Source: Oculina patagonica (taxonomy: Eukaryota). Taken from it: a stretch of 64,000 nt of DNA. Where the stretch lies: NCBI RefSeq assembly GCF_052425735.1, contig NC_135771.1, forward strand, positions 10,850,001 through 10,914,000, written 5' to 3'. Each line of letters begins with the position of its first letter. Position 1 is the stretch's first letter. The translations under genes were made by a program, and so were the position numbers. Shown one piece after another: positions 780-47,964 of the stretch. The notes under the pieces are model-generated. The model saw nothing but the letters and a program-made list of their open reading frames with translations, was not told the origin of the DNA and ran no database searches.

Positions 780-1058
780 TCCCATGATAGCAACTGGGGA
801 TGTAGTCAGGGTGATGAGATTGGAATCGTCCTAACAGACCATCAAAACAGCATATTGGCTCCACTTTCAGTCAACAGTGACGGATGGTACCTTCTGCCAG
901 GTTACACCTTCAACTCACCGGTCCTCGAGTTCTGTCAATCTCTCTCTTTCTCCGCTAGCGACGAGCTGCGTCTGTGGTATGGAGAGGATTTAATGGACAC
1001 TGGCGAGTACGACAACTATGGTACATCGTGCGCAGACCTGTATGATCTTACGGCTTAA
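780..1058 (+). pseudogene. 3' half of a divergent family member (type IV); 5' half absent from the window
   Basis: Reads in frame as SHDSNWGCSQGDEIGIVLTDHQNSILAPLSVNSDGWYLLPGY...LRLWYGEDLMDTGEYDNYGTSCADLYDLTA*. Sequence upstream of ~770 is unrelated and A-rich. Confidence 0.8.
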
Positions 1059-1872
1059 ATCAGCAGCCAACACTAAGCTGACCCGATGCAGCCGCAAACC
1101 TCGCACAGTACAATAAAATAGTAATTTTCAGTAGATGGGACAGTTTTGTAGTTACTTGATTGAAGGCATTAATAAAGGTACTCGAGGTGAAAAAGTTGTG
1201 TTTGTTCAGCGTCGTCTCCGAATACATTTTTTCCATTCACAAAAACTTAAGCTTGCTTCTCTATTTAAGCACTCGCATGCAGCAAAAACTCTGCAATCTG
1301 TCGTTTGGATGCGTTTCAAGGCGAACGTACAAAGTAAAGCCATTTTGAAAGAAATTGAACAGCACCTGATGCATAGAAGTACAATTCTTTGTAAATATTC
1401 CTAAAATATTGAAATTAAACTATCGATCAAATTTTGCCAGAGATGATGTAAAAATATGCAAGAATTTCTCTCAAGCGTTCGTGACAAAAATTACTCTAAC
1501 ATGCATTGATCATAGAGTTTCAATTTAAATTCCATTGGTTAGGTAAAAAAAAACATTTATTTTCCAGCTGAAAGAAAGAGGGAAAAGAATCAACAAAAAT
1601 TACTAAGAAATAAACAAAAAAAGAAAATAGAACTGTGAAAAAGTTGTAAAAATGTGTCCTAATTTTGGGCTGTGTATATGCTTGAGAATGATAGTTAACT
1701 CGCAACTGCCAGATAATCCGCATTTTTAGCAATTCAGTTTATCTTTAAATGTCTTTTGTCAGGAGTCATGGGCTCCTGCATTTTCCCAGTCAAAATTTGC
1801 TCAAATCCCAGTTCCCATTTACCCCCTTCAGGCCCCTCTTCCCTTTTCTAAACTTTTTATTTCAGTTGGACC

Positions 1873-2036
1873 CAGCCTAGTCCCTAGGCGTTCTCTCTTT
1901 TGTCCTGTAATCCGCGCGAAGTCTGGGACTGGGACGCTCAAGAGAACGCTGTTCTCGACGAGTCTTTCTCGGTGACGTCATGGCTCACAATAGGGTCCAG
2001 GGTTGACCGAGCCGAGAACGCCAAGGGACTAGGCTG
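1873..2036. mobile_element. MITE-like element with 23-bp terminal inverted repeats
   Basis: CAGCCTAGTCCCTAGGCGTTCTC ... GAGAACGCCAAGGGACTAGGCTG (1 mismatch). Paralogous copies at 21541-21704 and 35015-35178. Confidence 0.8.
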
Positions 2037-2489
2037 AGTTAATTAGACCCGGGTATCCAAACCTCTTTCACGGTTATGATTTTCCTTGTTTTAACTTGAT
2101 GAATTATTAATAAGTTTCAGAAGATTGTTTCTACAACTCCAAAGAAACACGGAGAAAATGTTCTCTAAATCTTTCAGAAAACACTGTGAGAATAAAAAGA
2201 AATCAATCGTTTATTTCGATTATCAAAATGTAAATTCTGTTTGTTCGCGCCATCATTACGTCAACATGTACACGTCGTGTTTGTCATGTCTTTCAGTCGA
2301 GTTTCAGAAGCACGGCTTTTAGTACAGAAAAACCCTTCAGTTCAGACGCATTTTTTCTACCAAGTGAATAGCCATCTCTGTTGTTTCCTATCAATCGATT
2401 TGAGGCGAAATAAAAAAAAAACTTATTCACAATAAATTAGGAGAAGGTTTTGCTTGCTGGGTATTGTTCAATTTAACGACAAACATAAC

Positions 2490-44207: not shown

Positions 44208-44711
44208 ATGTTGTTCAAATTCCTTTTGATGTCCTTGATGGCCACCGTGCTGATGTCCGACGAAGCTTCAGCAAATACCTGTCCTAAACACTGGGTGAAA
44301 CTCAACGAGTATCCAGTTTGCTTCGGAACCCGAGATAGCCAGTTCGGTAAGTTTACCGTCAAGACAAACATCGCCGTGAGCTCCCTGATGCTCGTGCACC
44401 GCTTAGGTGCGGTAAATTGTCAACATACCACTAAAGCCCGTGACAGCAACTGGGGATGTAATCGTACTAGCATTGGTGTCGTCCTAACAGACCATCAAAA
44501 CAGCATACTGGCTCCACCTTCAATCGACAATGAAGGATGGTACCTTCTGCCAGGTTACACCTCCAACTCGCCAGTCCTCGAGTTCTGTCAATCGTTCTCT
44601 TTCTCCGCTAGCGACGAGCTGCGTCTGTGGTATGGAGAGGATTTACGTGGATCCACCGAGAGCAACAACGCTGGTACATCGTGCGCAGACGTGTATGGTC
44701 TTGTGGCTTAA
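44208..44711 (+). CDS. Secreted Cys-rich protein, type I
   Basis: Intact ORF. Confidence 0.93.
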   Translation: MLFKFLLMSLMATVLMSDEASANTCPKHWVKLNEYPVCFGTRDSQFGKFTVKTNIAVSSLMLVHRLGAVNCQHTTKARDSNWGCNRTSIGVVLTDHQNSILAPPSIDNEGWYLLPGYTSNSPVLEFCQSFSFSASDELRLWYGEDLRGSTESNNAGTSCADVYGLVA

Positions 44712-47460
44712 ACCAGCAGCCAACACTACGCTGACCCGATGCAGCGGCAAACCTCGAACAGTAAAATAAAATGGTGATTTTCAGTAGAGGGGACAGTTTT
44801 GTAGTTACTTGTTTGAAGGCATTAATAAAGGTACTCGAGGTGAAAAAAAGTTGTGTTAGTTCAGTGTCGTCTCCGAATACATTTTTTCCCTTCACAAAAA
44901 CTTAAGCTTGCTTCTCTATTTAAGCACTCGCATGCAGCAAAACTCTGCAATCTGTCGTTTGGATGCGTTTGGAGGCGAATTACAAAGTAAAGCCATTTTG
45001 AAAGCAATTCAACAGCACCTGATGCATAGAAGTACAATTCTTTGTAAATATTCCCAAAATATTGAAATTAAACTATCGATCAAACTTTGCCAGAGATGAC
45101 GTCGAAATATGCAGGAATTTCTCTCAAGCGTTCGTGACAAGAATTACTCTAACATGCATTGATCATAGAGTTTCAATTTAAATTCCATTGGTTAAGTATA
45201 AAAAAAAACACATTTATTTTCCAGCTGAAAGAAAGAGGGTAAAGAATCAACAAAAATTAAGAAATAAACAAAGAAAGAAAATGGAAGGTGTGTAAAAGTC
45301 GTAAAAATGTGTCCTAATTTTGGACTGTGTATATGCTTGAGAATGATAGTTAACTCGCAACTGCTAAATATTCCGCATTTTTAGCAATTCAGTTTCTATA
45401 TAAATGCCTTTTGTCAGGAGTCATGGCCTCCTACATTTTCCCAGTCAAAATCTGCCCAAATCCCAGTTCCAGTTTACTCTTTCAGGCCCCTCTGCCCTAT
45501 TCTAAACTTTTTACTTGAGGTACCCCTTAAAATTCTTGGTTTTCACGTGACGTAATCAAAATTCCAAAATCCAGAATCGCAAGACCCCTGAGCTTTTATC
45601 CTTCACTGGCTATTAGATGTTTTTAATATATATTTTGTTGAACATTACACTGACTACACTGTAAAGCAGTTTAAATCATAAAACGAAGATATGCTTAAAA
45701 AAATAAAAGATTTGCAAAAAAAAGCGACGAAAACAAAGTTTACGTGTACCCATAGAGAGCCACATGTATTGTTAAGCGTGCACGTCTTTGGGCGACAGAT
45801 ACTTAGAAGTGCCAACTTCTCGAAACTTGAAACTGGCTTTAAGCAGCTGTTTTCCAACTCATAGAAGCCGTTGAAAAGTTAGCTAATTTCTGCTTTGACT
45901 AAAATGTCGTCATCCGATCCACTTTACAGTCTGACTGTGAAAAGACCACGCGGGGGATCAATATTTGTCTTGAATCACAATAGCTGGCTAATAGAAAACC
46001 CGACCCGACGGTCACGTTTTGTACTCTTTAAACTCAAATGTCACTGAACAAATCCATTGTGATTTTTTCTCAAAACTTGCACGGCATTAAGCAGCTGTTT
46101 TCCAACTCACAGAAGCCGTTGAACAGTTAGCTAACTTCTGCTTTGACAGAAATGTCGATCGTAACCGTATCCACTTTACAGTCTGACTGTGAAAAGACCA
46201 CGCAGCCTGAGGGATCAATATTTGTCTTGAATCACAATAGCTGGCTAATAAAACCCCACCCGATGAACACGTTCTGTACTCTTAAACTCAAATGCTAACA
46301 AAGGCATTCTGATCTTTAACAAACACCTTCCTACGTAACAAAAAACAAATCTGTTTCGTCATCCCTTTTCACAGCCTCTGTCGTCTTCTGTTTTAAAATT
46401 GGCATAGAATTGAGCGTTATTTTGGTATTCAGCATTAGCCCTATACGAGTTCTAAAACGGAAGACTCATTGTTAGTATTACACTCTCTCTGACTGTTTTT
46501 ACTTTTGTTGAAGTTCACGGCACAACAAGTGAAAGTTTGCCCTGTTTTAACTAGGCGAAAATTCACATTAACGTTAATGTTTAGAAGCCACGTCACCCAA
46601 GATGAATGCAACGGGATATGCTCTGTCTGCAGGTTCTTCTGACATTTTTCCAACTTGATAGATGTCAATTTGATATCTTAGCGTTTCTAATTACAACCTT
46701 AGTAAAGCACAAAAAGCCACCGATCACATTCAGTTCTTCACAGAGAGCTAACCAGTAACGAAGTCTTAGACTTGAAGATAAAGAAACAAGAAACCCACAT
46801 TACGGTGAGTCATTTTTGAAGCTACTTTGCATTTTTAACAGCAGAGTAATAAAGTAGCTCGCTTTTTCGTGGATTATGCGAAGCGAATACACGAGCCGGG
46901 TAAGTAATGAAAGCCGTCCGTTTTTCTGGCAAAAATTCCTACTGATTTTCTATTTTTGTTTCGCAATTTTATTCCTTCAAGACGGTCCATATAAACGACA
47001 TAGAAATCCTTATAGAGACTCTTATTGAAGATCGTAAATTCCACAGGCGTCAAACATCATAAATCATTACTGTAGTCAAGATGCGCAATTTCGTGTACTC
47101 CTTTGCGTGCGTCTCTTACTCCTCGTTTTGGGATCAAATTCGTTTTTTTTAACTTGTTTCATCTTGATATCACAGCCTGTGTATTTAACAACCGCTTGTT
47201 GGACTAAGAAAAGGGTAGGACAGGGTACGGTGTAAAACTTTGACGCCTTCTGTAAGCTAGATACATAATGCGAGAAAAAAGAAAGAAATCAGTATTCGTA
47301 TAAACAACCCCTTCTACTAATGTTCGACTATTCAATTGCTAAACATCAGCAGGACAAAGTTCGTCGCGATTTCTGAGCGCAATAGCGAAGAGGAGCCCCA
47401 TAACATCATGTCTTATAATCTTCTCATTTTTCTTCTGTCTCAGATCAAAACGAAGTGATC

Positions 47461-47964
47461 ATGTTGTTCAAATTCCTTTTGATCTCCATGATGGCCACCG
47501 TGCTGATGTCCGACGAAGCTTCAGCAAATACCTGTCCTAAACACTGGGTGAAACTCAACGAGTATCCAGTTTGCTTCGGAACCCGAGATAGCCAGTTCGG
47601 TAAGTTTACCGTCAAGACAAACATCGCCGTGAGCTCCCTGATGCTCGTGCACCGCTTAGGTGCGGTAAATTGTCAACATACCACTAAAGCCCGTGACAGC
47701 AACTGGGGATGTAATCGTACTAGCATTGGTGTCGTCCTAACAGACCATCAAAACAGCATACTGGCTCCACCTTCAATCGACAATGAAGGATGGTACCTTC
47801 TGCCAGGTTACACCTCCAACTCGCCAGTCCTCGAGTTCTGTCAATCGTTCTCTTTCTCCGCTAGCGACGAGCTGCGTCTGTGGTATGGAGAGGATTTACG
47901 TGGATCCACCGAGAGCAACAACGCTGGTACATCGTGCGCAGACGTGTATGGTCTTGTGGCTTAA
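47461..47964 (+). CDS. Secreted Cys-rich protein, type I (ISMM signal peptide)
   Basis: Intact; last gene of the cluster. Confidence 0.93.
   Translation: MLFKFLLISMMATVLMSDEASANTCPKHWVKLNEYPVCFGTRDSQFGKFTVKTNIAVSSLMLVHRLGAVNCQHTTKARDSNWGCNRTSIGVVLTDHQNSILAPPSIDNEGWYLLPGYTSNSPVLEFCQSFSFSASDELRLWYGEDLRGSTESNNAGTSCADVYGLVA

What the first reader, a model, noticed from the sequence alone, without database searches (positions are those of the whole stretch)
780..47964. 12-copy cluster of an unnamed secreted Cys-rich 'WYGEDL' protein with framework/hypervariable-loop architecture: candidate diversified recognition or effector system
Seen: four sequence types share the signal peptide, Cys scaffold and motifs (WVKLN..PVCF, VSSLMLVHR, WGC, LTDH, GYT.NSPVL, LRLWYGEDL, GTSC.D.Y). 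They differ sharply in four to five short segments, with indels. The C..WGC loop reads QHTTKARDSN / DASPSHDSR / SFVLSAQSN. The post-WGC segment reads NRTSIG / GDDRIN / GDGRIS / SQGDEIG. The post-GEDL segment reads RGSTESNNA / IDNGEYDNY / TNKTEFDNA / MDTGEYDNY. I cannot assign a named domain. Inference: a stand-alone disulfide-bonded beta-rich domain whose variable loops form a ligand-binding face, as expected for an innate-immune, lectin-like, allorecognition or toxin family under diversifying selection.
Basis: partly seen in the sequence, partly recalled or inferred. Interest (0 to 1): 0.85.

Follow-up and report, generated by a model that had tools for sequence, protein, structure and literature searches.

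The report
Coral AJLec-type lectin gene array
This is a tandem array of expressed genes in the coral Oculina patagonica for small secreted proteins of the AJLec family of calcium-dependent sugar-binding lectins. The segments that vary between copies are the loops of the sugar-binding site. The protein kind is known, but this coral carries an unusually large and largely overlooked repertoire of it.

Summary
There are twelve WYGEDL copies, all on the + strand, in ~3.2 kb tandem units, and every quoted loop string is present. The make-up is uneven:
- eight intact, near-identical type A genes plus one 5'-truncated A copy
- one intact type B
- type C, with an in-frame TGA and no 5' exon
- type D, a 5'-truncated fragment

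The protein is not unnamed. It matches AJLec, the Ca2+-dependent galactose lectin of the sea anemone Anthopleura japonica (PDB 6a56): E 5e-23 to 1e-25, and the AF2 model gives TM 0.75. Pfam has no model for it.

The Cys scaffold and most Ca2+ ligands are conserved. In a codon model of my own, the loops have dN/dS about 2.5 between types (p 0.0002-0.011). The eight type A copies do not differ in their loops at all and look homogenised.

Types A and B are transcribed. Type A shows a spliced 5'UTR intron and defined 3' ends.

The genome holds roughly 160-180 AJLec-like loci. The 2018 AJLec paper reported 29 in Stylophora and 7 in Nematostella.

Verdict: new members of a known lectin family. The expansion and loop diversification are of moderate interest.

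The parts
762..1058 (+). Type D copy: 5'-truncated fragment covering C..WGC to the stop, with no N-terminal half and no signal peptide. Likely a pseudogene.
   Evidence: (L020, query residues 71-167). DNA homology to the unit starts at 781.
4388..5616 (+). Type A gene 1: donor motif at 4388, intron, CDS 5054-5557 (167 aa), AATAAA at 5611-5616.
7642..9566 (+). Type B gene: donor motif at 7642, an intron enlarged by a ~0.7 kb dispersed repeat (about 8211-8935), CDS 9010-9525 (171 aa), AATAAA at 9561-9566. Transcribed.
   Evidence: (X4 contig on 8992-9387, 4 mismatches).
11499..12836 (+). Type A gene 2: 5'UTR exon from at least 11499 to about 11600, GT..AG intron of 636 nt, CDS 12255-12758, transcript end at 12836.
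   Evidence: (spliced contig 11600^12237; adaptor-tagged end at 12836).
14223..14546 (+). Truncated type A copy. Intergenic DNA is joined directly to mid-CDS at about 14222, just before the NWGC codons. It keeps the 3' half, the stop at 14487 and AATAAA.
16568..17791 (+). Type A gene 3: donor at 16568, CDS 17229-17732, AATAAA at 17786-17791.
19567..20791 (+). Type A gene 4: donor at 19567, CDS 20229-20732, AATAAA at 20786-20791.
33477..34260 (+). Type C copy: CDS-like frame 33692-34201, interrupted by an in-frame TGA at 33932-33934. Unit homology starts only at 33477, so the 5' exon and donor are absent. Pseudogene.
   Evidence: (L009, 1 TGA).
36976..38197 (+). Type A gene 5: donor at 36976, CDS 37635-38138, AATAAA at 38192-38197.
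40287..41626 (+). Type A gene 6, the best-documented model: 5'UTR exon from at least 40287 to about 40388, GT..AG intron of 638 nt, acceptor at 41026/41027, CDS 41045-41548, AATAAA at 41602-41607, transcript end at 41626.
   Evidence: (spliced contig 40388^41027; adaptor-tagged end at 41626).
43547..44789 (+). Type A gene 7: donor at 43547, CDS 44208-44711, transcript end at 44789. RNA contigs of 446-499 nt match with 0 mismatches.
   Evidence: (records 7, 13, 22).
46797..48023 (+). Type A gene 8: donor at 46797, CDS 47461-47964, AATAAA at 48018-48023.

Best explanation
The window holds a tandem array of AJLec-family lectin genes of the scleractinian coral Oculina patagonica.

Gene and protein. 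Each intact gene has a short non-coding first exon, an intron of about 0.64 kb and one coding exon. It encodes a preprotein of about 167 aa. A 22-aa signal peptide is predicted to be cleaved after ASA. The mature protein of about 145 aa is a small jelly-roll beta-sandwich held by two intrachain disulfides. In type A numbering these are C38-C159 and C71-C84 (AJLec C15-C156 and C48-C61).

Inferred from AJLec. In types A and C, two interchain disulfides (C25-C127', AJLec C3-C122') make a rod-like homodimer with one binding site at each end. A Ca2+ ion is held by the Glu of WYGEDL, the D/N-N pair ten residues later and main-chain carbonyls. This ion coordinates vicinal sugar hydroxyls. Specificity is set by the C..WGC disulfide loop, the post-WGC loop, the loop before PGYT and the post-GEDL helix/loop. 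The bivalent dimer would cross-link glycans on microbes, symbionts or mucus.

Evolution. The types (A, B, C, D and relatives on other chromosomes) diverged mainly in those loops under positive selection, which implies different glycan specificities. Type A was then amplified to eight near-identical expressed copies whose coding sequence is kept uniform. This raises the dose of one specificity; it does not add diversity.

What is shown and what is inferred. Shown here: homology, fold, scaffold and ligand conservation, transcription and splicing, loop-focused dN/dS > 1, and CDS homogeneity. Inferred: Ca2+-dependent glycan binding, dimerisation, and a recognition or immune role.
For: - Sequence homology: phmmer against the PDB hits only AJLec 6a56_A. 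Type A gives E 4.9e-23 over residues 28-165 against 5-162. Type B gives E 9.8e-26.
- Fold: the AF2 model has pLDDT 84.4. Its top Foldseek PDB hit is 6a56_A at E 8.8e-12, TM 0.74/0.76, rmsd 2.4 A and 34% identity. The next hits have TM of 0.44 or less.
- Scaffold: all six AJLec cysteines are present in type A. Of the Ca2+ ligands, E141 and N151 are kept in all four types and D150 in B, C and D. The residue list is from PMC6070535; the mapping is.
- Signal peptide: its length equals AJLec's 22 aa.
- Variable positions, across species: in a 91-sequence family alignment, the 11 most variable mature positions all lie in the AJLec binding loops. E144, D145, E151 and N154 are at least 90% conserved.
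- Variable positions, within this genome: 98 paralogs show the same pattern. The intrachain Cys are kept in 96-98 of 98, and loop lengths vary widely.
- Selection: NG86 loop dN/dS is 1.7-4.4 between types. My own codon ML model for the C14/C7 clade gives omega about 2.4-2.6 for loops, 1.15 for the framework and 0.5 for the signal peptide, with p about 1e-5 for loops = 1. With a loop-specific rate, omega stays at 2.5-5.5 with p 0.002, 0.011 and 0.0002.
- Expression: RNA-run contigs cover the type A CDS with 0 mismatches. One contig is spliced GT..AG from 40388 to 41027. Transcripts end 78 nt after the stop, downstream of AATAAA. A type B contig covers 8992-9387.
Against: - No binding data exist for any of these proteins.
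- Type A, the amplified type, has Asn in place of the Ca2+ ligand Asp150.
- Most AJLec galactose contacts are not kept. In type A, F67 is deleted, Y97 is Ser and F103 is Trp. In type B, R64 aligns to Asp. Galactose specificity therefore cannot be assumed.
- Framework dN/dS is about 1.1 in this clade, and 3 of 12 copies are broken. This is compatible with partly relaxed constraint.
- Type B lacks the Cys3 equivalent, so it cannot form the AJLec-type double interchain disulfide.
- The selection test is home-made, uses 4-5 paralogs, and gene conversion could distort it.
- The RNA runs are labelled 'RNA?' and consist of contigs, not reads.
Confidence: 0.8

Rival explanations
1. Relaxed constraint or decay. 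The array is a young, partly degenerating duplication cluster. The between-type differences would then be mostly neutral drift in surface loops that tolerate change and indels, not adaptive diversification.
For: Framework omega is about 1.1 and not different from 1. Three of 12 copies are truncated or stopped. All seven variable sites among type A copies are nonsynonymous. Loop alignments contain indels.
Against: Loop omega is significantly above 1, not merely equal to 1. This holds on gap-free columns and with a loop-specific rate. The Cys scaffold and Ca2+ ligands stay conserved while neighbouring residues change. The signal peptide has omega about 0.5. Types A and B are transcribed and properly spliced. 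The type A CDS is 8-13 times less diverged than its flanks.
Confidence: 0.1
2. The scaffold is re-used for a non-lectin role. The proteins would be secreted effectors, for example a venom or nematocyst component, an antimicrobial or protein-binding factor, or a mucus or skeletal-matrix component. The loops would bind protein or mineral targets, not sugars.
For: The galactose-contact residues of AJLec are not conserved. Type A changes a Ca2+ ligand. A quarter of the genomic paralogs replace both carboxylate ligands (Q..NN). In AlphaFold DB clusters, the same fold is a C-terminal module of EGF-like, Notch-like and chitin-binding proteins.
Against: The only characterised member is a lectin. The Ca2+ site residues are the most conserved non-Cys positions of the family. 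The variable positions surround that site, as expected if the sugar-site architecture is retained. There is no similarity to a known toxin family in Pfam or the PDB.
Confidence: 0.08
3. Allorecognition or self/non-self determinants. The variable loops would encode individual-specific labels.
For: Only the generic pattern of a clustered family with variable loops.
Against: The proteins are small and soluble with no transmembrane segment. The eight type A copies have identical loops. RNA contigs from three different studies match the type A CDS with 0-1 mismatches, so it does not look hyperpolymorphic. From my own knowledge, the known cnidarian allorecognition genes (Hydractinia Alr) are Ig-like transmembrane proteins.
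Confidence: 0.02

Closest known systems
AJLec, the Ca2+-dependent beta-galactoside lectin of the sea anemone Anthopleura japonica (PDB 6a56; Unno et al. 2018, PMC6070535)
   Same: Homologous over the whole mature domain, at 34% identity and E 5e-23 to 1e-25. It shares the same jelly-roll fold (TM 0.75), a 22-aa signal peptide, the same six cysteines (type A), the WYGEDL..DN Ca2+ motif, the same size and the stand-alone architecture.
   Different: The sugar-contact residues differ, and the loops are 5 and 9 residues shorter in type A. Type A has Asn at the Asp150 ligand. Type B lacks the Cys3 equivalent. The second Ca2+ site is not conserved (N21 is Ser in type A). The genes sit in a tandem array within a repertoire of about 160-180 loci. 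Specificity has not been tested.
Predicted AJLec homologues of Nematostella vectensis (7) and Stylophora pistillata (29), as noted in PMC6070535
   Same: The same cnidarian-restricted family. The paper already noted that Ca2+ ligands are conserved while sugar contacts vary.
   Different: Copy number here is about five times that of Stylophora. Expression, which that paper said was unconfirmed for the homologues, is shown here, together with gene structure, loop-focused positive selection and a homogenised eight-copy amplification.
PA-IL / LecA of Pseudomonas aeruginosa
   Same: A small jelly-roll sandwich that binds galactose through Ca2+. The AJLec authors report it as the nearest structural analogue.
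   Different: No sequence homology and a different site geometry and quaternary structure. It is not among the significant Foldseek hits for this model. It is an analogue, not a relative.
Diversified coral lectins: millectin (a C-type, mannose-binding lectin of Acropora millepora) and tachylectin-2 (positive selection, PMC2880987)
   Same: Secreted coral lectins whose binding region varies or is under positive selection. They have proposed roles in recognising pathogens and Symbiodiniaceae.
   Different: Unrelated folds. Those cases are single genes or small families with allelic or isoform variation. This case is a large multigene family with paralogue-level loop diversification.
Massively expanded lectin-like recognition families of other invertebrates (bivalve C1q-domain proteins, PMC6835236; snail FREPs)
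   Same: Hundreds of tandemly duplicated genes for small secreted recognition domains with variable binding surfaces.
   Different: Different fold and phylum. An immune role for the AJLec-like repertoire has not been tested.

Membership tests
AJLec-type lectin family | Significant sequence homology to AJLec over the whole mature domain | tested here: met
   phmmer against the PDB gives type A E 4.9e-23 (query residues 28-165 against chain 5-162) and type B E 9.8e-26. No other PDB family is below E 1.
AJLec-type lectin family | Small jelly-roll beta-sandwich fold of 6a56 | tested here: met
   The AF2 model has pLDDT 84.4. Foldseek places 6a56_A first at E 8.8e-12, TM 0.74/0.76 and rmsd 2.4 A.
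AJLec-type lectin family | Secretion: cleavable N-terminal signal peptide of about 22 aa | tested here: inconclusive
   There is a hydrophobic N-terminal helix at residues 3-16, and an ASA motif at 20-22 lies just before the residue aligned two positions ahead of AJLec Cys3. No SignalP-type predictor was available.
AJLec-type lectin family | Intrachain disulfide cysteines C15-C156 and C48-C61 | tested here: met
   All four Cys are present in types A and B, and those within the preserved parts are present in C and D. They are kept in 96-98 of 98 genomic paralogues. The bonding itself is inferred.
AJLec-type lectin family | Interchain disulfide cysteines C3 and C122 (covalent homodimer) | tested here: inconclusive
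   Both are present in types A and C. Type B and its neighbour L011 lack the C3 equivalent, and L015 lacks both. Only 11 of 98 paralogues have them. The homodimer prediction gave no verdict.
AJLec-type lectin family | Ca2+ ligands of the sugar site: Glu141, Asp150 and Asn151 side chains | tested here: inconclusive
   All three are kept in types B, C and D. Type A has E, N, N, with Asp150 replaced by Asn. Whether Asn still supports Ca2+ binding cannot be decided from sequence.
AJLec-type lectin family | Galactose-contact residues Arg64, Phe67, Tyr97 and Phe103 (beta-galactoside specificity) | tested here: not met
   In type A, R64 is kept, F67 is deleted, Y97 is Ser and F103 is Trp. In type B, R64 aligns to Asp, F67 is deleted, and Y97 and F103 are kept. 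This concerns specificity, not family membership. The AJLec authors saw the same in other homologues.
AJLec-type lectin family | Ca2+-dependent carbohydrate binding or haemagglutination | not testable with these tools
   This needs recombinant protein, glycan arrays or haemagglutination with and without EDTA.
C-type lectin (Pfam PF00059) | A C-type lectin domain detectable by profile | tested here: not met
   Pfam hmmscan at E up to 10 finds no family for types A or B. No C-type lectin appears among the PDB sequence or fold hits.

The most novel reading that the evidence does not exclude
The AJLec-like genes of Oculina patagonica number roughly 160-180 loci in tandem clusters on most chromosomes. 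They may form a major diversified glycan-recognition repertoire of stony corals that domain-based censuses have missed, because the family has no Pfam/InterPro model. The binding loops would evolve under positive selection. There would be two alternative metal/sugar-site classes, E..DN and Q..NN, loosely comparable to the EPN/QPD switch of C-type lectins. Single specificities would be amplified for dosage, as with type A here.
Probability: 0.4. Interest if true: 0.65.

Novelty: new member of a known kind. Interest (0 to 1): 0.45.

Why it matters
Lectins are thought to mediate recognition of pathogens and of Symbiodiniaceae by corals. Published coral lectin censuses select families by InterPro lectin domains (PMC10236652). 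AJLec-type genes have no Pfam model and are annotated 'hypothetical' or 'uncharacterized', so such censuses are likely to miss them.

Three results make this family a candidate for one of the largest lectin repertoires in a coral:
- The genome holds on the order of 170 such loci.
- The variable positions are the crystallographically defined sugar-site loops.
- The genes are transcribed.

It also gives concrete, testable pairs for structure-specificity work: type A against type B, and E..DN against Q..NN sites. O. patagonica is a facultatively symbiotic coral used as a bleaching and Vibrio-infection model (my own knowledge), so functional follow-up is feasible.

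Tried and rejected
- Pfam hmmscan of the four types at E up to 10 gave no family. The only hit, on the type C N-terminal piece, was a chance match at E 0.14.
- Rfam over the whole window gave no family.
- Pfam on seven other ORFs of the window gave nothing. 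These included the antisense and downstream ORFs that recur in every unit and the ORFs of the 22.9-32 kb repeat. I treat them as non-coding or repeat-derived.
- The homodimer prediction for mature type A (two copies) gave no verdict, with a score of 0.25 against a mark of 0.32. It counts neither for nor against.
- The search of earlier findings near this place returned nothing. The genome-wide look-up listed other lectin-like first-reader notes, but with no detail to test.
- Assembly artefact as the source of the eight type A copies is rejected. The units differ by 0.6-7% in flanking DNA and carry different indels and insertions.
- A toxin reading was considered and dropped. There is no similarity to any toxin family in Pfam or the PDB.
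- An allorecognition reading was considered and dropped (see rival explanations).
- I did not rank genes by RNA depth. The tool warns that contig depth is not a measure of expression.

Full report
**1. What is in the window**

A six-frame motif scan finds WYGEDL at twelve places, all on the + strand. The copies sit in tandem units of about 3.0-3.9 kb that are 92-98% identical, intergenic DNA included. A different tandem repeat with no lectin gene splits the array between about 21.5 and 33.5 kb.

The twelve copies are very uneven:
- Eight are intact type A genes. Their CDS are 5054-5557, 12255-12758, 17229-17732, 20229-20732, 37635-38138, 41045-41548, 44208-44711 and 47461-47964, each 167 aa.
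- One is a type A copy in which intergenic DNA is joined to mid-CDS at about 14222.
- One is the intact type B gene (9010-9525, 171 aa).
- Type C (33692-34201) carries an in-frame TGA at 33932-33934 and lacks the upstream exon.
- Type D (about 762-1058) is a 5'-truncated fragment.

A thirteenth, B-like copy lies about 4 kb past the window end (L011). Names attached to near-identical database proteins identify the organism as the stony coral Oculina patagonica. The window is chromosome-scale contig C14, 10.85-10.91 Mb.

**2. What the protein is**

Pfam has no model for it. A sequence search of the PDB hits a single family: AJLec, the 18.5 kDa Ca2+-dependent, beta-galactoside-specific lectin of the sea anemone Anthopleura japonica (6a56). 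Type A scores E 4.9e-23 and type B E 9.8e-26, over essentially the whole mature domain. An AF2 model of type A built on 91 homologues has mean pLDDT 84.4. Its top Foldseek hit is 6a56_A at E 8.8e-12, TM 0.74/0.76, rmsd 2.4 A and 34% identity. All other PDB hits are generic beta-sandwiches with TM of 0.44 or less. AlphaFold DB clusters with the same fold are uncharacterised proteins. One is named 'Cnidarian restricted protein', and some carry the domain at the C-terminus of EGF-like, Notch-like or chitin-binding proteins. ESM Atlas neighbours are cnidarian, unnamed and without a Pfam family.

**3. Mapping onto the AJLec structure**

The AJLec paper (PMC6070535) gives these features:
- a 22-aa signal peptide
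- intrachain disulfides C15-C156 and C48-C61
- interchain disulfides C3-C122' that make a rod-like dimer with a site at each end
- a sugar-site Ca2+ held by the Glu141, Asp150 and Asn151 side chains and the Cys48 and Met147 carbonyls
- galactose contacts Arg64, Phe67, Tyr97 and Phe103
- a second Ca2+ at Asn21, Asp142, Asn145 and Glu148

I numbered the HMMER alignments, checking the count against the published Cys positions. This gives the following mapping:
- The 'post-WGC segment' contains positions 62-72, including Arg64 and Phe67.
- The 'post-GEDL segment' is positions 143-152, including the Met147, Asp150 and Asn151 ligands.
- The indel-rich stretch before PGYT contains Tyr97 and Phe103.

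So the variable segments are the binding site.

Type A keeps all six cysteines, Glu141, Asn151 and Arg64. It has Asn for Asp150, Trp for Phe103 and Ser for Tyr97, and it has lost Phe67 in a 5-residue deletion. Type B keeps Glu141, Asp150, Asn151, Tyr97 and Phe103. It has Asp at the Arg64 column and lacks the Cys3 equivalent. A predicted cleavage after ASA (residues 20-22) leaves the mature N-terminus two residues before the Cys3 equivalent, as in AJLec. This is inferred; no signal-peptide predictor was available.

**4. Variability across the family**

In the 91-sequence alignment of homologues from many corals, the 11 most variable positions of the mature protein all lie in the three binding-loop segments defined from the crystal structure. 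So do 18 of the top 25. Mean entropy is 1.37 in the loops against 0.69 in the framework (Mann-Whitney p 4e-4). The Cys residues, E144, D145, E151 and N154 are at least 90% conserved.

In 98 non-redundant paralogues taken from this genome, the same contrast holds and loop lengths vary widely. For example, the loop before PGY ranges from 10 to 26 residues. Two main Ca2+-site classes appear: E..DN in 43 paralogues and Q..NN in 25. The E..NN combination of type A occurs in 5. The interchain Cys pair exists in only 11 of 98, namely the subfamily to which this window belongs.

**5. Selection**

Nei-Gojobori estimates between types A, B and C, the out-of-window B-like copy and the closest chromosome 7 paralogue give whole-gene dN/dS of about 1.0-1.9. 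The loops score 1.7-4.4, the framework 0.8-1.4 and the signal peptide 0.2-0.9.

I wrote a partitioned GY94-type maximum-likelihood model with shared branch lengths and one omega per partition. The results are below.

| Clade and model | omega, loops | omega, framework | omega, signal peptide | Test of loops = 1 |
|---|---|---|---|---|
| This clade (C14/C7), shared rate | 2.4-2.6 | 1.15 (not different from 1) | 0.5 | p about 1e-5 |
| This clade, loop-specific rate, five taxa | 2.58 | 1.12 | 0.52 | p 0.002 |
| This clade, loop-specific rate, intact genes only | 2.48 | 1.20 | 0.48 | p 0.011 |
| This clade, loop-specific rate, without type A | 5.46 | 1.13 | 0.40 | p 0.0002 |
| Sister cluster on chromosome 12, shared rate | about 1.0 | 0.26 | 0.56-0.60 | not above 1 |
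| Sister cluster on chromosome 12, loop-specific rate | 0.70 | 0.31 | 0.38 | p 0.135 |

The shared-rate results hold on gap-free columns.

Caveats:
- The implementation is my own.
- Few taxa were used.
- I drew the loop boundaries from the structure, but after seeing the alignment.
- Gene conversion among tandem copies is likely.

I read this as good, though not definitive, support for diversifying selection between types.

**6. The type A amplification is not diversification**

The eight intact type A CDS differ at only seven nucleotide sites. All seven are nonsynonymous and none lies in a binding loop. Two are in the signal peptide, two just after the cleavage site and three in the framework. 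Mean pairwise divergence is 0.53% in the CDS, 4.0% in the 1 kb upstream and 6.7% in the 3'UTR-proximal DNA. With that flank divergence, several synonymous differences would be expected, and none is seen. I infer that gene conversion homogenises the coding exon, or that there has been a very recent CDS-centred sweep. Either way the effect is more copies of one specificity. A 7:0 ratio is not itself significant, at about p 0.15 under neutrality.

**7. Expression and gene model**

Contigs from four RNA-labelled public runs in three studies were laid on two stretches.
- Contigs of 446-499 nt match the type A CDS at 44200-44698 with no mismatch.
- One contig joins 40388 to 41027, and equally 11600 to 12237, across a GT..AG intron of about 637 nt. 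The acceptor lies 18 nt before the ATG.
- Adaptor-tagged ends fall exactly 78 nt after the stop in three copies, about 20 nt downstream of an AATAAA. That AATAAA is present after all twelve copies.
- Nine donor motifs match the nine intact genes. Type C has none.
- A 397-nt contig with 4 mismatches covers type B at 8992-9387, and a second run also covers it.

So types A and B are transcribed, and the spliced contig shows that type A transcripts are spliced mRNA. The 2018 paper stated that expression of the coral and Nematostella homologues had not been confirmed.

**8. Genome context**

A six-frame search of the whole assembly with type A gives 150 scored matches out of 176 candidates. Eleven have internal stops and about seventeen are partial. 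A search with a divergent chromosome 6 member recovers largely the same set plus a few more, at 151 scored of 181 candidates. The family therefore has roughly 160-180 loci, mostly in tandem clusters. Examples are C6 31.28-31.59 Mb, C10 23.11-23.17 Mb, C11 9.99-10.97 Mb, C12 3.23-3.30 Mb and C13 3.16-3.22 Mb. In most distant paralogues the open frame starts just before the domain without a Met, which implies a separate signal-peptide exon. The AJLec paper counted 29 predicted homologues in Stylophora and 7 in Nematostella. Coral lectin censuses select families by InterPro lectin domains, so they are likely to miss this family.

**9. Mechanism proposed, and how sure**

I am highly confident (about 0.95) that these are AJLec-family proteins with the AJLec fold and scaffold. 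I am fairly confident (about 0.7) that the intact ones are Ca2+-dependent glycan binders whose specificity differs between types and from AJLec. It is plausible but untested (about 0.4-0.5) that they act as secreted bivalent recognition or agglutination factors for microbes or symbionts. Rivals are neutral decay, a non-lectin effector role and allorecognition; these are weighed in the rival explanations.

**10. Verdict**

However, the family is a named and solved one, and most copies in this window are a homogenised amplification. These are new members of a known kind. The added value is the repertoire size, the loop-focused selection, the two Ca2+-site classes and the first transcription evidence for coral homologues.

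Noticed in passing
window 22899-32037: A separate tandem repeat splits the lectin array. Its units are about 2.8-3.3 kb and 95-97% identical, with at least three copies and no lectin gene. Its ORFs (for example 24061-24363 on the minus strand and 27056-27466 on the plus strand) have no Pfam match.
   Followed up: partly
window 58160-64000: Another tandem repeat runs off the window end. Its units are about 2.9 kb and 98.7-99.1% identical (58653-59616, 60250-61216 and 63130-64000), with an older copy of about 83% identity at 58160-58585.
   Followed up: no
window 8400-8800, 41726-41878, 42505-42671: Short segments show very high summed RNA-contig depth and many loose ends at fixed boundaries (8602, 41726-41728, 41878) in all four runs. 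These look like dispersed SINE/MITE-like repeats. One sits inside the type B intron, and one is an insertion of about 157 bp present downstream of only some type A copies. There is no Rfam match.
   Followed up: partly
L011 = G000:C14:10917959-10918453 (about 4 kb beyond the window end): A thirteenth intact family member, 81% identical to type B, so the array extends past the window. The B against B-like pair has whole-gene dN/dS of about 1.9.
   Followed up: partly
window 781 and 14222: Both 5'-truncated copies (type D and the type A fragment) begin within about 40 nt of the same CDS position, just upstream of the NWGC codons. This could be coincidence or a recurrent breakpoint.
   Followed up: partly
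98 paralogues across G000 (L001-L110): The Ca2+ ligands co-vary. Glu141-to-Gln goes together with Asp150-to-Asn (Q..NN in 25 of 98, mostly the chromosome 6 and 11 clusters), against E..DN in 43 of 98. This removes both carboxylates of the sugar-site Ca2+ and suggests a second site class.
   Followed up: partly
window 44269 (loose end of an X2 contig): An RNA contig leaves the type A signal-peptide sequence and continues with letters that read ADWVDQWVKL. This is the mature N-terminus of the chromosome 7 paralogue L015. It suggests that this paralogue, which lacks both interchain Cys, is also transcribed and shares the signal-peptide sequence.
   Followed up: no
L026-L110 (other clusters of G000): In most distant paralogues the open frame begins a few residues before the domain and has no Met. 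The signal peptide must therefore lie on a separate upstream exon. In the window's subfamily the intron lies in the 5'UTR instead.
   Followed up: no
AlphaFold DB clusters: The AJLec-like fold also occurs as the C-terminal module of larger predicted proteins named EGF-like, Notch-like and chitin-binding type-2. The domain is therefore not always stand-alone.
   Followed up: no
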